From contig CM074804.1 of NCBI GenBank assembly GCA_037447605.1, positions 1,798,001 through 1,862,000 of the forward strand: a stretch of 64,000 nucleotides of DNA. The letters are read 5' to 3'. This DNA is from Zygnema circumcarinatum SAG 698-1b (lineage: Eukaryota > Plantae > Zygnematophyceae). Below, in pieces: positions 29,657 to 48,800 of this stretch (positions are counted from its first letter, which is position 1; each line of letters opens with the position of its first letter). The notes below the pieces were generated by a model. That model was given only the letters and a program-made list of their open reading frames with translations, ran no database searches and was not told where the DNA came from. The position numbers were made by a program, and so were the translations under genes.

Positions 29657-32489
29657 CGAGTGATACAGACTTGGGAGCTATACCCCCTTTTTTCATTGGG
29701 GAAGTAAGGAGTGTTAAATGTAAGTAAATAATGGTAACCTTATTCTTTAGAGCTTGTTGGCCTTTATTAAGACCCCCATAGTCATGCCTATTTTGGATCA
29801 GAAACCAGTGTGTACCGCACAAACTGTGTACGAGAAGTACGGCAGAAAAAGATCGAAGTGTGCTTGGCAACTCGTGGTTTTTTATCATATGATGGTTTGA
29901 CTGTAAACCTTAATTGAAACCCTAAAAAACCCATCTTTACTACCCAATCCCTGCTCGCAACTTGTGACACTTGCAAAAAACTCCAACCCCGGATGTCACA
30001 ACATTAATCTTATTCGCATCAATACTATAGTACTGGAGTCCTTCCTTATGGGAATCTTGATCTCGACTTGAATGTCCACACACTCTCCATGCTCTTGCTA
30101 GGAAAAGTCTCCCATCGACTCAAAAAAGAACATAAAGAAACACGACGTTGGTTGCCAAAGAGGATTCCTTTACACAAGGTGAAAGCATTCGATTGAGGAC
30201 AAGGCATACCAAGTGATGGAATGAGCTAGAGAGGAAGGGAGAAGGCTGCGAAATAAAAACCTTCAAGCAGAGGCTGTTGAATTGGGTCCATATATGGAGG
30301 GTTCCTCTGTCACAGCTTTTTCTAGCCTCTCTTTAGTGGACTTCCCTTTCTTAAACAGTTTAAGCAAGTGCAATTAGCCAGCACTTCAAATCAGCACTCA
30401 ACAGACTAATCCCCAAACGAAGTCTTTATTTCAACACCGACCAGAAGCATAAGCATCCTACTAACATGACCAGACTAGCGTGGTCCCTACGACTTGAAAA
30501 GGTTCCACAACTCAGAAACACTCGACACGTGTGGTTCCGTCCATACTATTTCGTACATCTCCATATCTGATTGCGCTTTCTTAACCGCACAGGCTTCCCT
30601 CTCAGTGACCCCGCGGCTGTGCCCCTAATCTTCCCCGGCTCCTTCCGGAACCTCAGATCGCATCGGAACCCGGACGAGATACGGCCCGCGGTAACAGAAC
30701 TCGACCTGCTGGACGATAACGGACATGGAAACCGTTAGGGGGGAGGGGGAGAGTGAGGGAGGCCGGGACGGGGGGAGAGTGGGAGGGGAGAAGGAGCGGG
30801 AGAGGGAGAGGGAGAGGGAGAGAAAAAGGGACGAGCGGGAGTAGGTGGGGGGGGTGGGAGAGGCGGCGGCTTCGCCGACGGAGAAGCTGACTTTGGACTT
30901 TGGAGAAAGTCATCGAAAAGCTGAATTCGAAGGCGTTTCAAGGACTGTAAATTTTTTAGATTGTAGAAAATTCAATTTTGGGCCTTAGGTGGAGAAGGGA
31001 ATTTCATTTAGGCATTTCATTTTTGCATTTTAGGTCGTTTTTATGGTCTTTGGCCTCGAGGGCTGAAGGAGGGCTGTGGGTTCGAGGGTACACAGTACTT
31101 TGGGCTGGGGCGTGACGTGACATCTACATGTACCATGTTCGGAGCTCAGTCCCGTGCGCCGTTCCAGTCCAGTTGGTCGCCCTCCATGTGAATCGTTTGC
31201 CGTGACGCAGTTTCCGTTCCATTTTTGACTGAGCGCACATGGCAACTCGAAAGTCCCGAAGACTTACATGGCCCTGATGGAGCTGTCCTCTACCTACCTG
31301 GCTGTACTGAGTTCTAACGACAAATTTAATGTACGGTCAGTGAGCTTTTGGTTTGACAGGACGAATTCTGCCGCCTACCGTACATCCAATTGGAAGGTGA
31401 CAGCACGACGGTGTGCACAAAACGACGAAAATAGTCGCTACGAGATGAGTTGATGACACACGAGCCTGGAAATTATGACGTCACAGAAACCGGCTGGCCG
31501 CGGTAAAAATCATTCGGTCGCCCCTGGAGGCGCCGCAAATCTCTCTCTGCGGATCGTAAATCGGACGGCCGAGAAAGAAGGTTGGGTCCATCGAGCGGTC
31601 ATCATTACGCCACGTTGGATATCACATTTTTATTTTTTTGGGCGGCAGTGTCCTGGGTTTCCCTGCTGGTGACGTGGCGCGTCCTCATTTTCAGGCAATT
31701 TCCGCTATACTGGAGTGAATTTGGTATCTAGTGCGCGGAAATAATTTTGTCTTCTTCCCCGCCCAATTATTATGGGCCCTCTGACCGCAGCCAATCAGTG
31801 CGCTCGGTTGACCTGTGACGTGGCATGACCCACCGTACGTATTTCGTGCAACCACCAGCTGGCAGGCCGGGCGGGCGGCCTTGTCCTGATGGGCCTTGTG
31901 GCCCCCCGGAGGCCATAGGCGGAGGCCGCCGCCGTATGCCGCCGTCCCTCCGCTCCCTCCGTACATCGAGCGAGCTGTCGCGAATTTAGCTGACGGACGC
32001 TGATGGGTCCACAGCGCGCATTTAGCACGCGTCCTCCTCTGGTGATGTCGGTGCCTTATGTAAATAATGTCGGTGGAGGCATCCTGATCATCGTGTCGGA
32101 TCGGATCGGATCGTGTCGTACATCGTGTCGGTGTTCCCTCCATTCCGTGGGGAACGTCGGTCACATCCCGACCGACCCAAGTCAACGCGCCACCGTCCCT
32201 GTCCCAGGCCATGGCGGTTGAGTGCGCCCTCCTAGAAAGCAGTCCCCTCCCCGGTATTGAGCTCTGACATAGAATGGTGCGGTCTCTGGCTGACTCGGCT
32301 TCTTCTCTTGCTCGCCCTCTCCCCCTCCATCTCCCTCTCTCTCCTCTCTCTCTCTAACCCCCCCTCAACCATTTCAGTCTCCCTCTCATTGTTTTCTCGA
32401 TCTCTCACTCTCTCCTCTCCCGCAATCTTGCCCTCACAACCTTCTCTTTCTCTGTCCTTTCCCCGGAAATTCACCATCAGCGAAGCATC

Positions 32490-33126
32490 ATGGCGGCAGG
32501 AAGGAGCCTCCCTTGCCTCCTGCTGCTTCTCGGATCCTTTGCAGCTCTCACATGTGCAGATGTCCCCGGAGGTAAGTTTGGAGACAGGAGCAGAACTGCA
32601 AGGGGATCCACCAAATGTAGGGAAGTAGGAATGCGGGTTTAGGGCTCAGGGTTCAGACGTCATACTAAAGGCGGAAACTAAAGGGATCAAAATTCTTCTA
32701 GGGGAGTTCTGCGGGAAGTCTATGGGAAGCTCTCTCTCGCTCTCTCTCTCATTCTTCCTTTCTTTCTCTCCGTCTTCCACCCTGCACCTCCCTCCTACGA
32801 TATATTTCGGAGCCTGAAAGGAGGTGCGGGAAAGGGGCGAGGGAGGAGGAAGGGAGGAGAAGCGACAGGAGAATGGGGGAGGTGTTAGGAGGCTGAGAGG
32901 GGGCAGAGTGAGCGAGAGGGTATGAAGGGGAGAAAGGGAGAGGGGTGAGAGCAATGGCGTGAATGAGAGAATTTTGGGGAAGTGGGGCGAAGCACCTGAT
33001 GGAGGTATGTATGGGGGCAGGGGCTCCGCCAACTTTAGGGCTGCCAGTATTCGGATTTAGGGCTCAGGGTTAAGAATTCAAATTAAAGGCCTATTAAAGG
33101 GCTCAAATTATTTCGGAGGGACTGTG

Positions 33127-33157
<31 letters not shown>

Positions 33158-36100
33158 AGCAACGGGAGGGTGGGAGAGGTGGTAGACAAAAGAATGAGAG
33201 GCTTAGGTGGAACAGAGTGAGGGAGAGGGACCAAGGGGAGAAAGGGAGAGGGGCGGGAGCGAGGGTTGTGGGGAGAGACGAGCGGGGTGAAGAGCAGGAA
33301 GAAAGAGACGAGGATAAAGAAGCAAAGTTGGACAGTAGAGGGCATAACCTTTTGCTCCCCTTTCTTCCATCCTTGTGTGTGAGAAAGAGAGAGAGCGAGG
33401 GAGAAAGGGGGGGGAGAAAGAGATAGAGAATGCGGCAAAGAGAAACAGGAGGGGGGAGGGAGAGAATCTTGGGAATCGAATCATTAGTCATACTCAGTCA
33501 CGGAGGCACGGCACGTTCGCACGCGCGAACATGTGAATGCGCATCCGACGGCGCACATGCTCACGAGGGCATGCTCAGATCGCACATCCGACGGCAGCGC
33601 GTGATGGGCGGATTGGACCCTTATGCACCTCCACATTCCAAGCAACGGCATACGGAGCCGCTCACTTGACTTGGTCCAGTTAGTCACGCATGTTGACCGC
33701 CGGAAAAAATGAATTCATTCCAATTCTCGAAGTATTTTTTGTTTCGTGCGTTTTTGCCGCATGGTGGTTCTTGTTCGTGTGGAGACACCGGTAGTGGTAG
33801 GGAGGGAGTGTAGCGCATTTTCTTTTCTATGATAGGGAGAGGAGCGCATTTACTTTTTTTCAAAATTGCGTTTTTTTCCGCCGAGCATAGATGGAGATAA
33901 AGCCTTTAGGGACTAAAGTCAAGGCGACCTCCCCAACTGCTCCTTATCTCCCAATGCTGCTGTTGGCCTACACAATGTGATCCCTTCATAAAGAGGCGTT
34001 CACAACCCTCTTTCATCACATTACATTCAGAATCATTACATTATCTACGCTCCATTAAACACTAAATTTCTTTCTAAAGTGTGATCAATCTCTCTCTTTG
34101 TGTGGCAGAGTGTGGATACGATTACTATGATTACTATTTAGGAGCATGCGGGAATGCATGCTGCTCGCAATATGGATATTGTGGGACGGGCGTTGAGTGG
34201 TGCGGGTCTGGCTGCTAACCAGCATATGGACATTGCGGTGAGTGATGGATACGTGAGGAGCAACCGGTACGAGCAAAGCGGAGTTTAGAAAGTCATGTCA
34301 GAGTGGAACGCAGAGTCTGCAGGTGCAGGAGGTTCAAGAGGAGAGGGGGATGAGAGGACCAACGCCTTACCAATGTGATGCCTAGGCGGAGATGGTTGAG
34401 ATTGCATGGGGCGCAATGGGAGAAAATGGAAGGTGCGACTGTGTCCGACTTTCCGCATGCAGATTGTACATGCTTCATTGTCCCTTTTCATCCTGCAATC
34501 GGTATAGGTCATAGCTGTAGGGTCCAGCTAGACAAAAGAGGGTAGAAGGAGAGAGGGAAAGTGACGAAGGAAGGGGGAGTGCAACAGGGAGAGGGAGTGG
34601 GAGTGGGCGAGGGAGTTGGATAGGGGAGAGGGAGGGAGAGAGGGAGTGTGAGAATTGGAGGGAGGGAGCGAGAGAGGGGGAGAATGAGGCAGGGAAAATC
34701 AATCCTTCACTCTTTTTTTTGACCCGCTGAAAACATCCAACCAGGAATGATTTTGCACCCGCAATGGCTGCAAGTTCCCCTGTCTGGAACTTTGACTTTA
34801 AGGTGGTTTTGAACTGATGATATTCCGCTCTCGGTTTCCTAGTAGCATTCAGCCGGATAGCGTCGTGTTTTTTTCATGTTCAGATGTGAAACCTCCAGAA
34901 GGTGTAACCGTTTCTCGCTTTGGGTGAGCAGGAGCATGTGGACCCAGTTATGGTCGTAAGAAATGTTCCGCCAATAAGTGCTGCTCTTCTATCGGTACTT
35001 GTGGGACAGGCGTGGAGTTTTGTGGAAGCGGCTGCCAATCGAAATATGGAAAATGTGGTGAGTGATTTAAAACTGTTGGCACGTTATCGAGAGGCCAAAT
35101 TTACAGCACTGCTAAAAAGAAAGGCGTGTGAACTAGAAAGGAATTTTTACTCGTTAATGTGAAATTTACCCCAGGCACACCATTTAATGCAGTGAAACCT
35201 TTGGCTAGCAATCCTTACAGGACAGCGGAAGTTTAACCTCAAGCCTAGGGGGATCTAAGTGAATCTAGTAAGGTTAATTAAAGAGAAAAGTCGTATGATG
35301 AGGGCTAGGCGCATAGCGAGTGTTTAGATCCATTGCCTGCATCATGAGTTGCACTCCTTTTGAAATCCACCGTCTTATTAAGAAATAATGGACGTTTTTA
35401 CAAACATAAACGAAATTTCCCACATACTTTTCAGATCCTTGTAAGACTTAGTTTTATCATATCTGCTGATTTGATTGGAACTTCACGTTGTGTGCAGGTC
35501 ATTTATGTTGCTATGCAGTCATGTTAGCATGAGATGTTAATTGCTTTCAAATAATCATGCTTGCTATACTTGGATGAGAAGAGTACTCTTATGATTGCAG
35601 ATCTATTACCTCCCCCGCCACAAAGCCCACCACCACGTTCGTTCCCTCCTCTTTCACTACTACCTCCACCGCCTTCAAATCCATCGCCACCTTCTCCCCC
35701 TCCAAGTGTAACATCGTCCCCACCACCTCCAAGTCCGCCAGCTCCTCCACCACTGCAAAGACAACCCCCCCCATCACCTTCTCCAAGTCCACCCCCATCT
35801 CCTCTACCTCTACCTCCCCCTCCCCCTCCCCCTCCTCCATCTCCTCTACCTCCAAGACCACCCCCATCTCCTCTACCTCCAAGACCACCCACATCTCCTC
35901 TACCTCCAAGACCACCCCCATCTCCTCTACCTCCAAGACCACCCCCATCTCCTTTACCTCCAAGACCACCCCCATCTCCTTTACCTCCAAGACCACCCCC
36001 ATCTCCTTTACCTCCAAGACCACCCCCATCTCCTTTACCTCCAAGACCACCCCCATCTCCTCTACCTCCAAGACCACCCCCATCTCCTTTACCTCCAAGA

Positions 36101-39100
36101 CCACCCCCATCTCCTTTACCTCCAAGACCACCCCCATCTCCTTTACCTCCAAGACCACCCCCATCTCCTTTACCTCCAAGATCATCCCCATCTCCTTTAC
36201 CTCCAAGACCACCCCCATCTCCTTTACCTCCAAGACCACCCCCATCTCCTTTACCTCCAAGACCACCCCCATCTCCTTTACCTCCAAGATCATCCCCATC
36301 TCCTTTACCTCCAAGACCACCCCCATCTCCTTTACCTCCAAGACCACCCCCATCTCCTTTACCTCCAAGTCCACCATTACCTTCACCACGAATTTTTGCT
36401 CCACCTATCCCAACTTCAGGACCACCACAATTTCCATCACTTCCGAAAGCACCATCCCCATTCCCTGTAGGACCACCGCTTTCGTCACCACCTCGATCAC
36501 CACCTCCGCCACCAAAATCACCAACATCAAGCCCCACTCCACTGCTACCCTTATCCCCTCCACCTTTGCCTCTACGTTCACCGATACCTCAAACACCTCC
36601 ACAACCGCCACTGCCTCCACCGGTACCCCCTCCATCACCTTCAGGAGCTCCATGTTCAAGTACGAGAAGGCAGCTACCTTGACCCCGTTTTTTGAATGTA
36701 GTTTTTCTTCATTCAATGCTGAATGCAACTATATCGTGATTTACAGTTTTAAACTATCCAGTTTTGCTTATTCTTTAATTCGTGTAATACTCTGTGTCCT
36801 TAAGAACTTGTTGTTTTGCCCGTAAATAGGCACTGAAGATACCCTCTTCAAACTGAAGGCTTCCTTTGTTGACCCCGACACCAACCTTGCAACTTGGAGA
36901 AGCTCGCGTCCTTATTGTAGTTGGGATACAAGTCGTTTGAAATGCAACTCCAACAACCAAGTTACAAGAATGTGAGCAGAAAATCTTCAGAGCCGTTTCG
37001 GCAGTAGTTGCACAATAGCATACGTTGTCTCCTAGACGAGAATAGTTCCTACAAACAAACACAAGTTGGCTTTGTAGGCGTTTTACCCATCTAAATTCAT
37101 TGACCTTGGCTGTCCTTTCAGTCTCAGGTCACGAGCACACGATGTGAAATTTCTCTGCCTCTTCATGGAAAGTAACCTTATGGTCTCATTAGAAAAAAGT
37201 CTGTGCCCTACCGAACCAGTTTGCTCAAAGAGTTCACGTTTTATCCGTCGTCCTCACGCAGGTCCTTGAACGGATTAAGGCTCAGTGGTTTCATTCATCC
37301 TTCCATCGGATGTCTCACTAACCTACAAGTGCTGTGAGTAACATCCCTTCCCTTATCATCTACATAAAAAATATCTGAAAGGATGTAATGCTGGAAACTA
37401 AATGTAATTTGAACAAGAGAGAAAAATTCTCTCAGAGGATTGCTTCAAAACGTGGTCGATGGTCGGATTCGAACCATCTTTGAATTCACGCTGACACGCC
37501 ATTGGTTACGCTAGAAGAATGTTCGAAGATAGATTCGATCAATTTTTTCTTAGTTGTTGCAATAAAGAGAGCAGGCCAAAAGGTGTATTAGCTGAGTTTT
37601 GAGTGAAGAGAACAATGTCAGAGTTGGGTTCACACTCAGGTACGGCATTGATAGGGGCCCCTGCTTGAAAAGGTTCAATTGAGTCTAGACAGTCCCGTAG
37701 TTACGAATAGCAATATACTTTTTTTTCTGGTATGTGCTCTCCTTGACGATCAAAACCTTGGCTCGCAGGGATTTATCCGGCAACTCTCTTACAGGAGGAA
37801 TCCCCTCATCTATTGGCGACCTTCTTGATCTTCAAATCCTGTGAGAAGCGCCCGAGTCAGTCTAGAATCGCAATGGCCTGTCTTTATCTCTGATAGGAAG
37901 CTGCTTGTCGTCAGATTGTATGCCTTAAATTCCATGTTATAGTATGGCTTCTTGTTACATTATTTGTATCCAGTTCGGAGATTCCTCCCATTCGATTGCA
38001 ATAATTCTCGCAAACAATGTTTTCTACATTAGTGAAAAAGAATGACCATGAAATAGCATTCACCCAGTGTTTGTCCATTCAACAGGGACTTGTCGAACAA
38101 TCAACTGACTGGCAGCATTCCTGAATCCCTCGGAAATTTAACGAGACTCGTAAGGATGTGAGTGGCTGTACTGCAACGACTCATTGAGACGCGCCTTTAC
38201 GCTGCTCGCTATTCCATAGACGCAATTGTAAGGAAATGACACTTGCTTCCATTTGCCTGGTACAAACATCTCATGGGAGTTGAAGATGGCGTGTAATGGC
38301 AGGACGTTGTCATCGAATTCCTTAAGTGGCCCCATTCCAGCATCCATTGGTAACCTCAAGTCGTTAGAAACTCTGTAAGGGCTCTTCCTAAAATCAAAAG
38401 TTTGTACCCGCTCTGTTCCCTCTCGGTATAAGACATGATTTATGTGATGCTGAAGAACGTAAGTTCATAAGAGCATTTTCCATCTTCTGAATTCCGCCTC
38501 TCCCCACTTTTTTTCTTTCGTTTTTTTCCGTTTTCTATGGTGCAGAGAAGCAAATGGAAATACTCTCACAAGCTTGCCGGCTACCATTGGTGACTTGAGA
38601 AGCCTAAATACGTTGTAAGTATTCCTCCAAGCCAATGTGTTTTTCTATCTTCAAAACAGCGTGATCGTTTTTGAATGGATCAAATTCTGATACAAGATGA
38701 TACATATTGAACAGATAACTAATTGCAAACAAACCGCAAGAGATCTTTTTATTTTGTTTATTGATTTGTAACATATTTCATACGTTCTTGTGCCAAATTT
38801 GAAGATTGGTGACATAGAGCCATGCCTGCTGGTTTCCATCGCCATGTTCCAATCTTTGCTGTGCAGGAGTTTGCAGAACAACGCAATCACAGGGAACATT
38901 CCGCCCCAGCTTGGGAACATACCCACGATCTCGACCATGTGAGCTTCGCCATCTCTCTAGTCACATTTTCAGTCCTAATTGATTGCTTTACGGAGCAAAG
39001 AAATGTAAAGTCTCCGAGTCCTGAATAATTGGTGTTTGTACAAATGTCCAGAAGTTTCACTAGACCAAACTTGATTAGTTTTCACTTCCTCTGATATTAA

Positions 39101-42100
39101 TACTGAGACTTTATATGAAGCGGGAAAAACTGCTGCCTCGTATGACGTCATATCCTTGATTGATGCCATATCTCAGTTTTCAAATTTTCATTATTGGTAC
39201 GTCGGTCATAATTGCACTTAGTATTCTTCATGCAGACGACTCATGGGCAACTTTTTTTTTTTTTTTTTGCAGAAGGCTGAGCAATAATCTCTTCATTGGG
39301 ACTATCAACTTAAACTTCGTGACTTTCTTAAACATCTCGTCTTTCTTCGTCGAGATTTCGAAAAACTTTTTAACGGGAACGCCTTCCATCTACGTGAACG
39401 GAGAGCTATTGCTCGCAAACGGACAACAGACCTGTGACGACATCTCGTCCAACTGTTTTGGCGGTACACCCCAATGCGACACTCAAGGGCAGAAGTTACT
39501 CTCGTCATGCGCGGCCTTCTGCAACGCCACGCAGCCAATGGGCTCGTGCGGGGGACACGGCTTCTGCACGAACGTGGCAGCCCCGCGATGCATTTGCGAC
39601 CCGGGCTATGAAACCACGAACGCTTCTCCTTTCACTTGTACTTTTGGTGAGCTCAGATCGTCCTTTCATGCATTTGTGTACCCTGACGGGTGTCAGCAAT
39701 TCTACTGTATGAAGGTGCATTTTGGCTCTATCGAATTTTCAGCAGTCTCGGGTGGTCAGGGCAGCTCACTAGAGTCTTTGACGTTGCAGAGTATCGTGGT
39801 GTTGGATTGGTGCCGCCGACATCGTACAGCTCCCCAAGCCTGAACAAGTACTTTCGCTATGCAAGTGCGGGTTACTTGTTTTTAAATCGAAATATCTCGC
39901 CGTCCTGGTTGGTTGCTACAAGCTGGAATTGGGCGAACGCACAGGCAGTGCAGGCGGTGAAGGATCAACAAACTTGCAGTAAGCAACACATGGTCAAAAC
40001 TCAAAACTCAAAACTCAAAACTCCTCGTTTGTAGTTAGCTATATGTGCCCGCCGGTTTCCAGAAGTGGGTTTCCTCGCTGAGCCACCAGTGCGATTGTTC
40101 CCTCCGTTTGTGCTCCCTCTTGCAGATACCTGCTGGCTTTTCGCTGCAATTTCAGCTATTGAGAGCGCTTACTTCATCGCCAATGCGGGGCAGTTGGCAG
40201 TGCCAAACATTGCAGAACAGCAAGTTTTGGACTGTTCCTCTTTGAACAAGACTTGCCCGACCGGGGGTTCGCCGACTGATGCTCTTAACTTTGCGGCCGG
40301 ATTCAACCTCCTTGCAACTGGCGTGTATGGAGGTCCCAGCAACTGCCTTGCTGGCCAGGTATTGTACACAGAAAGGATGTGACTTACTCGCTGTTGTCAC
40401 TTAATTACTTTCTACTTTTTCCAATGTCGTATATATTATGTCGAGGCAAGCATGGGTGTAGTGCAGATTCTTTACAATAATACAAAATTGTGTATGATTT
40501 CCTTCCGAAAAAACTATAGTTAAGGTCAATCTACTATCTCCATTCCAAAAAGAAAGAACCAACATTGTGTATTCGTTTATGGACCAAATAATGTACCAGC
40601 ATGACACATGCTACTCCCCAAGCGTCGGAATACATAAGACAAGCTCTATTTGCGTAGAGTCATTCAGCTTACCATCGTGTTCTTTGGACAAAAGGTTCAT
40701 CTCTCGTTCTTGGTTTATTTCCAAACATTTGGGGACGGATCTCCGAAAGTATTTTTTTTTTTATGGGTTTTTTTTTTTTTTTAATCCTCGTAGGCGAATG
40801 GCGGGATCCGCATTTCCTCCTACGAGAAGGTCCAGTACCAGAGATGGATCGGCCTCCTCCTCGCCCTCCAGCAGCAGCCCGCCATTGTCAACATTGAAGC
40901 GAGCAGCACGACCTTCATCAACTACAAAGATGTGCGTCACGTCACGTCACGTCACTGACGCATTTTCTTACAAAAGAAGAAACAAAAAAATGGGCGTTAG
41001 ATCATGGCATGGTGTTTATGGCATCCATGCGCAGGGCCTTAACATGGACTTTTTTATGATGGTGAAGTTCCTTCCGTGACGTGACTCGTGTGATGGATTC
41101 CTTTCAGGGAATATATGACGACGACGATTGCTTCTCCGGCGGGGTCGACCACACGGTGGTGGCGGTCGGGTACGACCTCACATCAACTCCGCCGTATTGG
41201 ATTCTCCGGAATTCATGGGGACCCAACTGGGGGGAAAACGGCTACATTCGCATAAAGATCGCGGGAGGTGCCGGCATTTGCGGAATCAACAGTCTCCCCG
41301 CTCTCATTCCGATTGTTCAACCATCGGGTGAGGGAGATGGCTGTCACAATCAAGCTTGAAACACGAGCTGGCAAATGTCAGCGAAGTAAAGAAGGAGAGA
41401 TAGAATATCTTTTTTCCAATCTTAACCCTGATTCAGAGAAAGAAAGAGATCAGTTAGAAACGCGGGCCCTATCGAAACTCAAAAAACCCCGCAATTCCAT
41501 GTGTGAGCAAGAACTCTTGTCAGGTCTCACTTCATTGTTTGAGAAGTTCCTTTGTAAGCATCTTGTCACTTTACAACACGTGTGAAAGACTAACACGCTC
41601 ATATGAGGACCTTTATGAGAGGGCAGTGGGTTGTACGAGCACTCTCTTCAAGCAGTCCGTTCTTATTGTATGTGGACAATCAATTGCGCCTGTATCCTGA
41701 AAAAGAGTGATTATGCCAATGGTGTTTGAGGGTTTGCTTGCAGGAACTGATCCTTGCTATACAAACAACTTTGCAAGGAAGATTCTCAAGAACGAGTGCG
41801 GTCCTGGCCGCATGAACCCTTGCGGTAGCGGAGTGTGTACTCCGAACGGGATCACAAACCTTTGCGAATGTGGAGAGAATTTTGTTGCCGTGACGAACTC
41901 AGATGGTTCACAAACATGTGCTCCAGGTGAGGATGGGTCCTACATGCAGTCCTAAATCACTGTAATGCTAAAAAATTTATGAACAGTAGAACCTTTCAAT
42001 TTTTTTTTTTTTGACAGTTTGACACTGGCAGAGGCGCACTAAGCTTGGTGAATGATTGGAAAAACCAAACCTACGATAAATCTATTCTTCTCTTCCATAC

Positions 42101-44110
42101 AAAACCTTCCTTTTTGGGCTCCATGCAGCCTCCCCATGTACCTTCTCCTCTCGCAATCCATGCGGTGTGGGGATCTGTGCCGACTCTTCCACTCCTCCGA
42201 GCTCATACGTGTGCTTCTGTCCCGCTAACTATGTCGCCGATATCGTTGACGGCGTCCTCACTTGTTTGCCAGGTTCAAACTTCCCTCCTAATGTAGCTCT
42301 CTCATGCTTCTTGTGCTTATACGAATTGAAGATCTGAAGATCTTTCCCTCGATTATGTTTGCTCGCTTAGTCAATCTACAAATGAGCCGTGAATGATTGA
42401 TGGAGTATGACAGCAGCGTTTACTCGTCTTATCATTGGACTCAAGAGGTAGCTGTACTTCCTTTTTCTTCGATGGCATACATTGGCGGTTGATGCAGATG
42501 CATCTGCTGGAGACCTTCCAAAGTTCTTCACGGTCCCGCCGGGTGTCAACTTGACGTGCTACGATATATACACTACGTATGGGATCAACAAAGATGCGTT
42601 CTTAAAGCAGAATCCAGTGAGTCTGGTTGTGAAATGCATCTTCTGCATAAACGTACGCACATTTGCTCGCTAATGGTTTGATATATTCAGAATTGCATTT
42701 GTACGGATACGCATAAGATACGAATGGTAATGTTGGTTCTGGACATTTTTTTTTATGTGTCTCCCTGTGCAGAAACCACGCGATGTATTTCCATGCAGTG
42801 CAGCTTCTCATTGGATTTTGTAAAATTTTAACTCATGTATGCATTTCTGTACTTGCAGAACATTGACTGCTCGACGACTCTGCCAGGAAACACGCTTCTG
42901 AACGTCACCAACTACAGTAACTGCTCCTTGGTCTACGCCGTCAATGAAGTTAGCTCATAACTCTGAAAACGCGATCGCCTTTGGAAATGGCAATGTTTGG
43001 ATGACGTATCAAGATCGATTTCATGTTTCTGCACGCATTCTTGTGCCTGACACTTGTTTGCACTTAGAACATCAGACTCTTAGTTTTTAGGTAACGTGTT
43101 GTTGTGGTTATGTTTGAGACTTAGAGTACCTCAGATACTTTGCGCTGCACGAGCCTTCCACAATGGAGGAAAGATGATGTTTTGACTGAACTGCCTTCAT
43201 TATTCTGCTCAGGGCGACACATGCTCCAGCATCGCCTCCACCTTCAATGTCACATCGATCGCAGGACCTGGCTCGACGAATCCCGACCTTGATTGCCTTC
43301 AACTCCGGCCCTTTCAACAGGTAAGACATTGAATTTCGAAATCCAGTTTTGTTAATTCTAAAAATCCAGTGAACCTTGTAAAGCCTTACCAGATAGGAAG
43401 GTGGCGCACCTCGTTCTCATAGACGAGTGACCTGCCTGCAGGTGTGCATTGAGAGGGGCAACATGGAGGTGGTGGGGCCATGCACATTTCCCTATGATGT
43501 GTTACCTGGCGAGTCATGCCTCTCCATCATCCTCGAGAAGCTTGATGGCGACATACGCCTCTTTTATAAACTCAACCCGGGAGTGTATTGCGGACGGCTT
43601 CTCTTTGCCACCAGCAGCGATATACAACTCAGCCAACAGGTAATGATGATTCGTGAATCAGAAACTACCCTTGTCCCTCTCGCGCTTTCTTCCTCTTCGG
43701 TCCACTCTCTCTGTCCCTCTCGTTTCTCCCTGTCCTTCGCTCCCCTCTACACTCTCTTTCTCCCACTTCTTGTCCTGCCGCCACCTTCGTCTCCCGTCTC
43801 CTTCTTCGTTTCTCCCTCCCCCTTCGTTTCGCTCCCCTTCCCTGTGACCTTTTTATCCTCCTCTATGCAGGTCTGTCTCGCGGCAGATGAGTTTGGAAAC
43901 GGAGCCTGGTCCTGCGCTGAATTTCTTTACAAGCTAAATATGATCGATACCTGCGCAAGCCTCAGTCTTTGCTACGCAAAAAAATTGTCCTTCAAAAAGT
44001 TCAACAAGTTCGCATGCACGACAAGAAATTTGAAAGCAGTTCTGGCAGGAACAAACGGTGGGAACATATGCATGCCAAGATCTGTGCCTTGTTCTCTAAA
44101 ACCTTATTGA
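32490..44110 (+). CDS. Secreted modular protein: signal peptide, hevein/CBM18, Pro-rich extensin-like stalk, LRRNT plus LRRs, EGF, papain-family C1A protease, 2x EGF, 3-4x LysM (about 1357 aa)
   Basis: Phase-compatible GT-AG exons: 32490-32571, 34932-35057, 35601-36659, 36830-36971, 37262-37333, 37769-37840, 38086-38157, 38303-38374, 38546-38614, 38867-38938, 39273-39646, 39790-39978, 40126-40358, 40794-40931, 41108-41327, 41744-41926, 42129-42272, 42498-42616, 42859-42948, 43213-43320, 43442-43639, 43871-44110 (4074 nt, open frame). The linkage of the first exon across the long first intron is the least certain part. Confidence 0.8.
34109..34237 (+). pseudogene. Hevein/CBM18 exon with in-frame TAA (pseudo-exon or null allele)
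   Basis: AG..GT-bounded 129-nt phase 1-1 exon reading [42 protein letters not shown]. The TAA at 34216-34218 sits where the intact paralogous exon has CAA (Gln). Confidence 0.8.
34932..35057 (+). other. Hevein/CBM18 chitin-binding domain exon (intact)
   Basis: [42 protein letters not shown] has 8 Cys in hevein spacing. It is not shown in the ORF track. Confidence 0.88.
35840..36370 (+). repeat. 27-bp coding tandem repeat, 19 copies, encoding PPRPPPSPL
   Basis: Unit cctccaagaccacccccatctcct(t/c)ta. The Arg codons run from 35855 to 36341 at an exact 27-nt period. Confidence 0.97.
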
Positions 44111-45803
44111 GGTAAAAAGTGTATGACACAAACTTGTTTATCACTATAGGGGTACTTCCATATTGATAGTAATAGCCTAAAGACAAGTGAGTGTTGTGAG
44201 TCCCAAAGTGTGCGTGTTATTGTCCTTTCGGTTCTCTATACAGGTAAGAGGACTTCTGTGTTAGTTTCTTGGACCTGTTTGTTTCAAGGGGGGTGGAGTA
44301 TGAAGGCTGGAATGAGAGAGGTTCAGCTGTAGTGTTCTGGGGAGAGAGAAAAGCACTCTAGCTCTCTTTTCATCTGGCATGGTGCAGTGGTTATACTTTG
44401 AGTGTTTTGGTAGCAGCCGGAATATCAGAGTTGTAATTATTGCTAAACTTAGGCCGTAGAGCTTTCTCTAAAACCTCTCGTGTATGCATTTGCTGTGAGA
44501 CTGTAAATTGGCTTGGCCTGTTGCCTGAATCATTGAATTGTGGAGGGTGGTAGCACCACAGAGGGTGGCTCCGCTCGAACATTGCACACTTCGAAAAAAA
44601 TTGTGGAGATATCAGCAGCCACATCCGTAGAATGTTTCAAGAAAGTAACATGAAGTGAAGACATTTTAATAGCCCTAACAGTGCGAGTTGACGAATTGCC
44701 TGCTTCCATTTGCCTGTTGATTATTTGGCAGTTCTATTTCCGTTTAGTGACAACACGGAGTTGACCTTATGTGTGTCGTGTCATTATGGAGTGAATTTAA
44801 TGTATTGGTTATGGAGCAAAAACATGACAGGTTTGTCATCGATATAGGAACCACTCGAATGTCAGTACTGTCCTAATAACAAGGCAGACAGTAGAAAACA
44901 TCGGCAGTTTGTTTGCAGCTCGCCATCCAAATCATCGTACCTCTGCTGTTCACAGATGCGAATCTCGCAAGTGCACGGAACAGAAGTACAGCGTCGGACA
45001 GATCGCCTGGATCAGCCACAGGACTAATAGTTCCAACCATTTCATGGATAGGCGGAACCAGCCAACCATTGGCAATGGTGACCCAATAATTGACATTCGA
45101 CGACCATGGGTAGGGTTTTTGGGGTTTTAGGGTTAAATCCAGTGCATGGCCATGGTCAGCATTTGTGAACCAATCCTAGCGCACTCGAAACTGTTGCAAG
45201 AAATCCTCAAGTTTCGGAGAGTTGATGGTAACATAAGGACCATCCCATGAATAGACATGACAACGTGACATCATACGGCATGACATGACATGACATGGGA
45301 ACATCGCATAACAAAACTTCTGCAGTTACATGACGAAGGGAGGCATCCGATTCGCCCCCCTACACTCCCTCTGCATATGCTGGAGTCCAGCAGGGAAACA
45401 ATAATTGCAATTAAGTGAATGACGATCTAAGGCTTCACTTGAACTCTCCAAATAACCCCCACCACCTCTACCTAATGTGCATTGTCCTACCAACCTCTCC
45501 CTCTCCCTCTCCCTCTGCCTTACCTGCTGCGCCCGTTCTGCACACTACCCGACTAACAAACGGCTCCGGCAGACGCCATGTACAAAGGGAGGGCAAGCCC
45601 CGGAAAAGGTACAGTACCATAGCTTCTAAGCGGAACTGAAGGCCTATGTGGACCATGGAGGTCCATTCAGTCGGTCCAGCACCGCACTCCAATCCAAACT
45701 GCTGAGCATGTTCTCTCGTTTTCAGATCAGTTTTCCCTATAGTTTTGGAGGCTCTAAGCAACCAGGGTATCTTAGGCAGACAGACTTTCCTCCCTAAAAT
45801 AGC

Positions 45804-48800
45804 CTACACGCCCCCTCCCTTCATCACGAGAGTGTAGGGCCGGGACGGGCCGTAGTACTGCGTATAGGCGACATAGGCGAGTCCCAATATCACGATCCCA
45901 ACAGATAGCGCGGCAGCAAAAGCAATCCAGCCAGAGAGAACCAATCCATCGGTTGAGACAGCCTGCTTGGAGGACACCTGCAACTGAGAGAGAGGGTGTG
46001 AGTGAGAGAGTGAGAGAGAGAGAGAGATGAAAGTTACAAGTGGAGTATTTCACTAGGGTTAGAGAAAACGAGTGAGGGAGTGAGAGAGAGATGTAGGTTA
46101 CACGTCGAGAAATTCATTGAAGTTAGAGTAGAGAGAGAGAGGGCTGAAGGTTAAAATTAGGGAATTTCAATGGGATTAGGGTCACACTTGGCCTAGAAAT
46201 AGGGTTTACTGTCAAAAGTTCAGAATTAGGGTTATTTGCGAGACTTAGAACTCCGGTTAGGCTTCGATCTAGTAGATTAGAAAGGGATTCAAATCTAGGA
46301 TTGCATATAGAGCGAATAAAGACTACAGTTAAGGTTTCAATCCAGAATTAAAGTTCCCATCGTCCAAAAATTAGGGTTCTAAATAGAGTTAGGGACAGCC
46401 TTCAGCACAAGGCAGAGTATCAGAAAAAATCTATCTTTTTGCATCCTAACCATAGCAATTCACGACTTGGAACGCGCTTCATTCTTAAGCAACAAGGGAC
46501 GGCACTCACTGCGGCAATCTTGTCGAGAGTCTCCTGCAGCTTTGCATCGTCCAAAGCTCCTCCCACGTGCGAGCCCTCCCTGTAGACGACCTTCACCAAC
46601 TTCTTGCAGTCCGGGTCGAGTGTCTTCCAGTCCTGCTGCAGGAGGCACTGTCCGTACACGCCAATCACGGCGCCATTGATTGGCTTCGCCTCCTCCGACT
46701 CGCACTTCGCCTCCACCGTCGCATCGCATGTCTTGGTCAACTCAGCTCCCTTGCTGTACTGCCAGAGAGCCATCCGTACAGCGTAGGATACCTGCAAAGG
46801 GAGGTACAGAAAATAAACATCATTCCTCAACATATCAAGTAATGTATCAAGACTACAACGTTTAGTTCACTTTGGATTCCATTGCACATGCTCATGTGCA
46901 AACGTGCAGTGGAAAGTGTTTCTGAGTCGAGTAAATTTCTGCACTTGAGGGCCATCTTCCTGGCTGTCAAAGATTTTTTGGATGATGTTTTCAGTTTTAT
47001 TTACAATTAGGACAAGGGCTTTAAGAAAGTAGGGTTTCAAAGTGTGTGAGGTTCTGGGGTTCTTACTCTATGACTGAATTCTCATCTGTGCAGTTTCATC
47101 TTAACTCTTCATATAGAACTATCTGCAAGTAATGACATCTAGACAGGTTTGCATCTAGCATGATCCCATTCCTTCACTTGCAGATTCATTATGATTCAAC
47201 AAGCGCTTGAATGATTCCTAAACTACATATCGTTTATAGCATTCGGCCCTTCCGAATCTCACTTCTCTACATCATGATTGAGTCCTTACACATTTTACTC
47301 CACCTATTTATGATAACACCTCCTCGTTGTCAGTCAGTAGTACAAGCGGTTTCTTATGAAGGCATTGACTTCTTTAAAGTCTTTCTTTCTTTAATTTCTT
47401 CTTCTGAAGAAATTAACTGTTGCACAATCCGCTCAGAACTGAGCGACTGTTCGTTCATATTCTTACTGAAGACTACAAAAATAAAATGAATTATTTAGCT
47501 TCTCAAGGATGATGTTTTCCTCCTAATTTAGCCAGCCTAAATGCATCCTTATTCCAACGAAGTTAGGAAATGCTGCCCATTCCAGCTTAAAGTCTGAGCT
47601 TCATCCTACTTCTCACCCTACAAATAGACTGACAACATGAACCCAAATGTAAAGAGATACCAATGTCCCCAACCACATCAAAATTGAGCCAGATTTAAGA
47701 CCAGAAGTTTAGACATACCTCTGTAGCACAGGATGCTGATAGCTTCTTGAACTTCTTCACCATGCACTTCAGCACAAGAGCATGACCCTCTTGTCCTTTG
47801 TCAACCCCATTGCAAAGATCAACCACATCCTTTTCACACTCTTTTCGAACTCGCACATCCAAGCGGTAGTCTGAGGAGTGCCGAATCTCCTGCAGATTCA
47901 TCTCCGCCTTGCAGGCTGCCCCCATTCCGAGCTCTTCCAGCTTCGACTGCAAACATTTGAAGGCGTGACCGTCGGCAGGAGGTACATCTTTGCAGAAGTT
48001 CTGCAGCTCTGCATGTGCACGAATGAAGAAGCAGGTTAGGGCAGATTAGCTGGCAGATTAGGTATAAACAGCTGCTGAATGAAGGAATGTCTGCAACAGT
48101 CGGAGATCCTGATTGGATGAACAGAGATTAAGGATGATACCCCCAGCAAGTGTTTGCATAAACAGTGAATGTAACCGAGTGTGCGATAGCCGAAAGGAAG
48201 AGGAGAGTTTGTATGGTAATATGTTCTGCAATGTGAGGGTACTTAGCAGAAAAGGGTGATGTGTAATATGCGACTTCACCCACCCGTAAGGTCAGAAATG
48301 CTTCATGCGATGAGAATTAGAGCAAATGTGTTGACTAACCTTGACCGCAGGCGTTCATCAAAGTAGGAGTCAGCCTGATATCTGAAGACTGCAACCACAG
48401 CAGAATACAACCCCTCACTCAGTATTCTCTACCTTCCCTCAACATTCCTGCAATAAATTCATTATCATGCTACTAAAAACATTGAGGTAATTGCTATGAA
48501 CTGTGTCCAGCACAAACCGAGTCAAACGAAGGTCTGGACATATAAGGCAAGTGGAAAAAAGAAATTCCAGAAAGAATACCAAATGCAGAGTAAGTCGGTT
48601 TTAAAACTGAAAACTTCATCCCACTGTCTCAAACCACTGATTTTAAACCAGATGGGCTCGTTCCCTACCTCCATGATGCTGAATCTCTCCTCCTCTGCCT
48701 TGCAAGCGTCCGAAAGCTGATCGCGATTCTTCCTCAGACAGCGGAGGGATCGAGTGTGGTCCTTACTGACTTCACTGCAAAATTTGCCTAAGTCCACTTT

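What the first reader, a model, noticed from the sequence alone, without database searches (positions are those of the whole stretch)
32490..44110. Secreted chitin-targeted protease chimera: hevein + extensin stalk + LRR + EGF + papain + LysM in one polypeptide
Seen in sequence: 22 phase-compatible exons give one open frame of about 1357 aa. It has a signal peptide ([23 protein letters not shown]), a hevein domain, (PPRPPPSPL)19, a plant LRRNT ([22 protein letters not shown]) and about 8 plant LRRs. These are followed by an EGF, a C1A protease, two EGFs and 3-4 LysM domains ([55 protein letters not shown]). There is no TM helix or kinase. Established knowledge: hevein and LysM bind GlcNAc polymers (chitin, peptidoglycan), and LRRs and papain-like proteases are core apoplastic immunity components, normally in separate proteins. 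Inference: this is a wall-anchored sensor-effector that binds fungal, chytrid or bacterial walls at both ends and delivers a protease. I know of no described protein with this full architecture.
Basis: partly seen in the sequence, partly recalled or inferred. Interest (0 to 1): 0.92.

Follow-up and report, generated by a model that had tools for sequence, protein, structure and literature searches.

The report
Hevein-LRR-headed algal papain-LysM protease gene
This is a real, transcribed gene of a green alga close to land plants that strings sugar-binding and receptor-type modules onto an apparently active papain-type protease; it is one more variant of a large unstudied algal family, and a premature stop in an extra early exon may make this copy a dead allele.

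Summary
Largely confirmed. The 22-exon model gives 1357 aa with all GT-AG introns. Single spliced contigs from four studies join the stalk end, LRRs, EGF, protease, EGFs and first LysM, so the fusion is real from the stalk onward. Catalytic Gln/Cys/His/Asn are intact; there is no I29 prodomain.

Three corrections. (1) A second hevein exon (34109-34237) has normal splice sites and an in-frame TAA. The long protein exists only if it is skipped, which I could not test (about even odds). (2) The in-frame hevein lacks two of three chitin-binding aromatics; the canonical hevein is the broken one. (3) The stalk has no Tyr, so it is not a cross-linking extensin.

The protease-EGF2-LysM4 body is shared with dozens of Closterium, Mesotaenium, Spirogloea and Netrium proteins carrying variable heads. 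The scan already found several such genes elsewhere in this genome. C1A+LysM in algae is mentioned in PMC6362431. In Netrium, heveins sit between an I29 remnant and the propeptide tail, so heads occupy the prodomain position and may be cut off on activation. No relative with hevein plus LRR was found. Verdict: a new head variant of an undescribed zygnematophyte family, probably a LysM-tethered extracellular defence protease. Function is untested.

The parts
32490..32571 (+). Exon 1: ATG, signal-peptide-like N-terminus (27 codons)
   Evidence: only stretch with KD19 near 2; not covered by reads
34109..34237 (+). Hevein A exon, phase 1-1, 129 nt. Canonical chitin-binding residues (Ser, Tyr, Tyr, Trp) but in-frame TAA at 34216-34218 (codon 64) and a 9-nt in-frame duplication. 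Must be skipped for the long ORF
   Evidence: PF00187 E 7e-6; splice scores 8.2/9.7, like RNA-supported sites
34932..35057 (+). Hevein B exon, phase 1-1, 8 Cys; Ser19 kept, positions 21/23 Ile/Thr, position 30 Phe (degenerate binding site)
   Evidence: 75% identical to hevein A exon over 68 nt
35601..36659 (+). Pro-rich stalk exon (352 aa, 58% Pro, no Tyr) with a 27-nt tandem repeat at 35837-36375
   Evidence: 3' end joined to the LRRNT exon in 4 runs
36830..36971 (+). Plant-type LRR N-cap (LRRNT_2)
37262..38938 (+). Six single-LRR exons (37262-37333, 37769-37840, 38086-38157, 38303-38374, 38546-38614, 38867-38938), phase 2-2
39273..39646 (+). Last LRR(s), Cys-rich cap and EGF-like domain; best match is the ectodomain end of an algal LRR-EGF receptor kinase
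39790..39978 (+). Conserved short pro-segment (G-L-x-P ... F-R-x-x-S) and start of the mature C1A domain with the oxyanion Gln
40126..41327 (+). C1A catalytic domain exons 40126-40358 (catalytic Cys), 40794-40931 and 41108-41327 (His, Asn)
41744..42272 (+). Two EGF-like exons (41744-41926, 42129-42272)
42498..44110 (+). Four Cys-type LysM modules over five exons (42498-42616, 42859-42948, 43213-43320, 43442-43639, 43871-44110); the fourth is degenerate; TGA stop
   Evidence: contig lengths in X10 and X20 imply splicing through to the stop
44111..44713 (+).

Best explanation
A secreted papain-family (C1A) zymogen of a zygnematophyte family built as variable head + short pro-segment + C1A + EGF2 + LysM4. 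Shown: one spliced transcript from stalk end to LysM, intact catalytic residues, no I29, no membrane anchor. Inferred mechanism: the head (hevein, Pro-rich rod, LRR-EGF module shared with receptor-kinase ectodomains) has replaced the I29 part of the propeptide. The kept G-L-x-P segment blocks the cleft until it is cleaved in the wall or mucilage. The mature C1A-EGF2-LysM4 then docks through its LysMs on GlcNAc polymers (chitin of chytrids, fungi or protoplast-feeding protists, or peptidoglycan) and cuts proteins at that surface. The head mainly positions the proenzyme or binds a protein partner; this copy's in-frame hevein probably binds chitin weakly or not at all. For this gene all of this needs hevein exon A to be skipped in at least part of the transcripts.
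For: Joints in four studies, on single contigs. 50 of 51 family-invariant positions kept, including Q/C/H/N. About 90 relatives share the body and differ in head (LRR, legume lectin, hevein). In Netrium P0096 (and by alignment Logan P0090), heveins lie between an I29-like stretch (PF08246 E 1e-4 in P0096) and the G-L-x-P motif. That motif aligns with the propeptide tail of an ordinary I29 proenzyme and with the Y-L-G stretch of pro-triticain. Propeptides inhibit by running through the cleft, anchored by their N-terminal domain (PMC7863939). LysMs of a Mesotaenium relative match horsetail, fern and Volvox chitinase LysMs and Ecp6. The AlphaFold model of that relative has a papain fold and four LysM-like units.
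Against: No activity, binding, localisation or induction data. Exon A has splice sites as strong as RNA-supported ones, so inclusion with a premature stop is as likely as skipping. The window's own LysMs score weakly and LysM4 is degenerate. The position of the pro-segment in the cleft was not measured (no model coordinates available; pLDDT about 65-80 there).
Confidence: 0.45

Rival explanations
1. This copy is a recent null allele (transcribed pseudogene). Hevein exon A is normally spliced in, its CAA-to-TAA change stops translation at codon 64, and at most a short secreted hevein-like peptide (about 40 aa, 7 Cys, full chitin site) is made. The family mechanism holds for paralogues but not for this gene.
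For: Exon A donor and acceptor score 9.7 and 8.2, in the range of RNA-supported sites. Canonical hevein first and degenerate hevein last is also the pattern in Netrium P0096, suggesting A and B were both used. A single base change explains the stop, and the family appears large and redundant in this genome (AI notes).
Against: The remaining 1357 codons have no lesion and keep 50 of 51 invariant residues. The exon is symmetric and skippable in frame. Fully spliced downstream transcript is present in four studies. Exon A also carries a 9-nt duplication, which may mean longer disuse.
Confidence: 0.35
2. A non-defence role: wall or mucilage remodelling, adhesion, filament fragmentation or conjugation, with LRR and lectin heads recognising the alga's own glycoproteins and LysMs binding endogenous GlcNAc glycans.
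For: The in-frame hevein has lost its chitin aromatics. Heads in relatives include legume lectin and LRR rather than chitin binders. The family is strongly expanded in conjugating algae. A Volvox chitin-binding cysteine protease is induced by the sex pheromone as well as wounding (from memory, paper not held).
Against: LysMs of a relative are closest to antifungal chitinase LysMs. Rapid head swapping on a constant effector body is typical of immune arms races (inference).
Confidence: 0.15
3. The stretch is two or more adjacent genes (lectin/LRR gene, protease gene, LysM gene) merged by the reader.
For: Only the untested 5' part (exon 1 to the stalk repeat) could still belong to a separate transcript.
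Against: Single contigs run from the stalk exon through the protease to the LysM exons in four studies. The stalk exon is one open reading frame across the repeat. Relatives have the same LRR-EGF-C1A-EGF-LysM fusion.
Confidence: 0.03

Closest known systems
Zygnematophyte C1A-EGF2-LysM4 proteins (Mesotaenium ME000166S01720, ME000065S09001; Closterium CLOP_g11113; Spirogloea SM000013S26461; Netrium EP00270_P005659); unnamed, undescribed
   Same: Same pro-segment, protease, two EGFs and four Cys-type LysMs, colinear, 35-60% identity per exon; many also carry LRRNT-LRR-EGF
   Different: Hevein + Pro-rich stalk + LRR head together was not seen in any of 148 fetched proteins. Netrium has I29 remnant + 3 heveins and no LRR.
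Algal C1A peptidase + LysM proteins noted by Van Holle and Van Damme 2019 (PMC6362431); Volvox carteri pheromone/wound-induced cysteine protease with three chitin-binding sites (Amon et al. 1998, from memory, not held)
   Same: Papain domain fused to chitin-type binding modules in green algae; the C1A+lectin combination is reported as not retained in vascular plants
   Different: No LRR, EGF, hevein or stalk described for them; relationship to this family was not tested (no chlorophyte hit at E<1e-60)
Plant papain-like cysteine proteases (papain, RD21, maize Mir1-CP, tomato Rcr3/Pip1)
   Same: C1A fold and catalytic residues, secreted; defence roles of these enzymes are from established knowledge
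   Different: They have an I29 prodomain and at most a granulin tail; this one lacks I29 and carries about 1100 aa of extra modules
LRR receptor-like kinases/proteins and LRR-extensins (LRX)
   Same: LRRNT + plant LRRs; the LRR-cap-EGF exon best matches algal LRR-EGF-TM-kinase proteins; Pro-rich segment
   Different: No TM or kinase; the stalk precedes the LRRs and lacks SP4/Tyr cross-linking motifs
LysM-GH18 chitinases of fern and horsetail (PDB 4PXV, 5BUM) and Volvox chitinase LysM (5K2L)
   Same: Cys-type LysMs of this kind target an enzyme to chitin
   Different: The effector is a protease rather than a glycosidase; four LysMs at the C-terminus

Membership tests
Peptidase C1A (papain family) | Catalytic Cys, His, Asn and oxyanion Gln in their motifs | tested here: met
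Peptidase C1A (papain family) | PF00112 above the curated cut-off; papain fold | tested here: met
   (36.6 and 67.6 bits vs 20.7); fold shown on relative P0024
Cathepsin-L-like C1A zymogens | I29 prodomain with ERFNIN/GNFD motifs | tested here: not met
   No PF08246 hit; only about 45 aa between EGF and the mature domain
Peptidase C1A (papain family) | Proteolytic activity, E-64 sensitivity | not testable with these tools
   bench test
Hevein / CBM18 | Cys pattern and PF00187 | tested here: met
   hevein B 39.8 bits vs 27.8, 8 Cys
Hevein / CBM18 | Chitin site Ser19 + aromatics 21, 23, 30 | tested here: not met
   hevein B has S/I/T/F; only the stop-bearing hevein A has S/Y/Y/W (PMC10136942)
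LysM | LysM sequence profile and fold | tested here: inconclusive
   Single exons fall below the Pfam cut-off (domains are split by introns) but are colinear with the four LysMs of relatives
LysM | GlcNAc-polymer binding | not testable with these tools
   bench test
Extensin / LRX | Repeated SP3-5 with Tyr cross-linking motifs | tested here: not met
   0 Tyr, 2 SP4 in 352 aa
LRR-RLK / RLP | Transmembrane helix, with or without kinase | tested here: not met
Zygnematophyte C1A-EGF2-LysM4 family (undescribed) | Pro-segment G-L-x-P..F-R-x-x-S + C1A + 2 EGF + 4 LysM, in order | tested here: met

The most novel reading that the evidence does not exclude
The family is a set of recognition-gated zymogens in the sister group of land plants. 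Exon-shuffled lectin and LRR heads are inserted into the papain propeptide in place of I29, so that ligand binding by the head releases the cleft-blocking segment and switches on a LysM-tethered protease at the intruder's surface, a plant-lineage analogue of horseshoe-crab Factor C/G. In this gene, alternative use of the stop-bearing exon could additionally yield a free secreted hevein peptide.
Probability: 0.15. Interest if true: 0.85.

Novelty: new variant of a known kind. Interest (0 to 1): 0.5.

Why it matters
How the algal sisters of land plants defend themselves outside the cell is largely unknown. A large, expressed, undescribed protease family with a constant protease-LysM body and swappable recognition heads, reported lost in vascular plants as a C1A+lectin combination, is a directly testable candidate for an algal extracellular immune arsenal. 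The position of the heads inside the propeptide suggests a testable activation mechanism. This particular gene adds one more head variant to a family the scan has already found repeatedly, and it may be a null allele, which limits its individual weight.

Tried and rejected
My first model put a false intron inside 39790-39978 and broke the frame; corrected. A TAR=Gln genetic code as the explanation of the TAA is unlikely: 41 Gln codons in the gene are all CAA/CAG and two neighbouring terminal ORFs end in TAG. A search for a truncated exon1+hevein A peptide found no candidate; this is uninformative, as this organism's proteins seem absent from the collection (best hit to the LRR-EGF exon 38%). 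No paralogue or further hevein exon in the 64-kb window. The ESM Atlas gave no usable feature hit and only partial LRR or papain structure matches. The Zygnema genome paper and its supplements do not mention this family. The Volvox paper is not held. Contig depth was not used as an expression level, as the tool advises. The joined 1357-aa model was not sent to any search or fold tool, per the operators' note; all searches were exon by exon, and the structure was predicted for a Mesotaenium relative (P0024) instead.
Full report
Observation. Reading 31000-46000 and checking exon phases gives 22 exons from ATG 32490 to TGA 44110. All introns are GT..AG and the frame is 1357 codons with no internal stop. 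Pfam scans exon by exon confirm hevein, LRRNT, LRRs and Peptidase_C1, with weaker EGF and LysM hits. The stalk holds 19 nonamer repeats. No hydrophobic helix follows the signal peptide in the exons scanned.

Transcript evidence. Fourteen runs hold about half the words of 38500-44200. Four of them, from four studies, were laid on 36580-42579. Coverage is essentially confined to the exons, and 13 GT-AG joints match the model exactly, from stalk to LRRNT through to EGF to LysM1. Two joints next to poly-T tracts were dropped by the tool but are implied by record coordinates. Single contigs carry the chain: the X20 contig (3730 nt) runs from 36340, inside the tandem repeat, to about 600 nt past the stop if spliced as modelled. 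The idea of separate LRR, protease and LysM genes is therefore refuted. The 5' part could not be tested because the one call was used.

The extra exon. Between exon 1 and the modelled hevein lies a second hevein exon, 34109-34237. It is phase-symmetric and 75% identical to the other over 68 nt, and it has TAA at 34216-34218 where hevein B has CAA. Its splice sites score as well as RNA-supported ones. It keeps Ser19 and all three aromatics, whereas the in-frame hevein B has Ile and Thr at positions 21 and 23; these aromatics make the chitin contacts (PMC10136942). A non-standard code is unlikely. Either the exon is skipped, giving a protein whose only hevein is degenerate, or it is included and this copy is a null allele making at most a short hevein peptide. 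I put these at about even odds.

Family. The LRR-cap-EGF exon finds algal LRR-EGF receptor kinases and Mesotaenium LRR-EGF-C1A-EGF-LysM proteins. Searches with those found 35 and 91 proteins. The named ones are from Closterium, Mesotaenium, Spirogloea and Netrium, plus unnamed transcripts, with heads of LRR, legume lectin or hevein. One hit (P0111) is an ordinary I29 cathepsin. The window's exons align colinearly to the family profile, including four LysMs, and keep 50 of 51 invariant residues. None of 148 fetched proteins has both hevein and LRR motifs, though the searches were limited in length and in candidates scored. Earlier notes of this scan describe at least seven other loci of the kind in this genome, with hevein arrays, ricin-B, PAN/FTP or LRR heads (unchecked AI notes). 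Literature: C1A+LysM proteins are noted for algae and said not to be retained in vascular plants (PMC6362431). I found no paper on this family. A Volvox pheromone- and wound-induced cysteine protease with chitin-binding sites is recalled from memory only.

Mechanism. The protease has Q, C, H and N but no I29 domain. A conserved pro-segment of about 45 aa begins with G-L-x-P. It aligns with the tail of an ordinary propeptide just after its last helix, and that tail matches the Y-L-G stretch of pro-triticain. Papain propeptides inhibit by running through the cleft, anchored by their N-terminal domain (PMC7863939). In Netrium P0096 the order is signal peptide, I29-like stretch, three heveins, G-L-x-P, C1A. 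So the variable heads were inserted into the propeptide, and in this gene the head has replaced I29. The simplest reading is a zymogen whose head is removed at activation, leaving C1A-EGF2-LysM4 tethered by its LysMs. In a Mesotaenium relative these LysMs are closest to chitin-targeting LysMs of fern, horsetail and Volvox chitinases and Ecp6, and its model shows the papain fold and four LysM-like units. The stalk lacks Tyr and is better seen as a glycosylated rod than as a cross-linked extensin anchor. Chytrid parasites and protoplast-feeding protists of such algae are documented, which makes a defence role plausible. Activity, ligand, processing and induction are all untested.

Verdict. A real, transcribed multi-domain gene and a new head variant of an undescribed but widespread zygnematophyte family that works like a lectin-tethered papain. 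It is a C1A member by catalytic motifs, but not a canonical I29 zymogen, extensin or receptor. Interest 0.5.

Noticed in passing
window 34109-34237: If exon A is included, the product is signal peptide plus a hevein-like peptide of about 40 aa with a complete chitin site and 7 Cys, resembling short 6-Cys hevein-type antimicrobial peptides; the mRNA would be a likely NMD target.
   Followed up: partly
window 39273-39646: The LRR-cap-EGF exon matches algal LRR-EGF-TM-kinase receptors (P0001, P0003) better than protease-family members, suggesting ectodomain exchange between receptor kinases and these proteases.
   Followed up: partly
P0096 / P0090 (L004): Netrium and an unidentified Logan transcript keep an I29-like N-terminus with heveins inserted before the propeptide tail; the last Netrium hevein has also lost its aromatics.
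   Followed up: partly
P0029, P0032, P0033 and other Closterium relatives: 15 of 78 fetched relatives with the motif have Ser in place of the catalytic Cys, including legume-lectin-bearing Closterium members: probable pseudoproteases within the family.
   Followed up: no
P0051: Filed in EukProt under the vampyrellid amoeba Leptophrys vorax; probably a transcript of its algal prey, not evidence of the family outside Zygnematophyceae (inference).
   Followed up: no
whole window: Organism is probably Zygnema circumcarinatum (inference): 1177 windows on 71 pieces, DNA runs of 69-109 Mb contigs, and same-label 2017-2018 runs lacking the DNA, which fits the SAG 698-1a/1b species mix-up. Neighbours look like housekeeping genes (Pfam: accA, MOSC, MIF4G/UPF2-like, Cys-rich GLG1-like; plastid rpl3 and ZEP-like by eye).
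   Followed up: partly
window 32601-32672 and 33019-33090: Old internal duplication (76% over 72 nt) in intron 1; non-coding.
   Followed up: no
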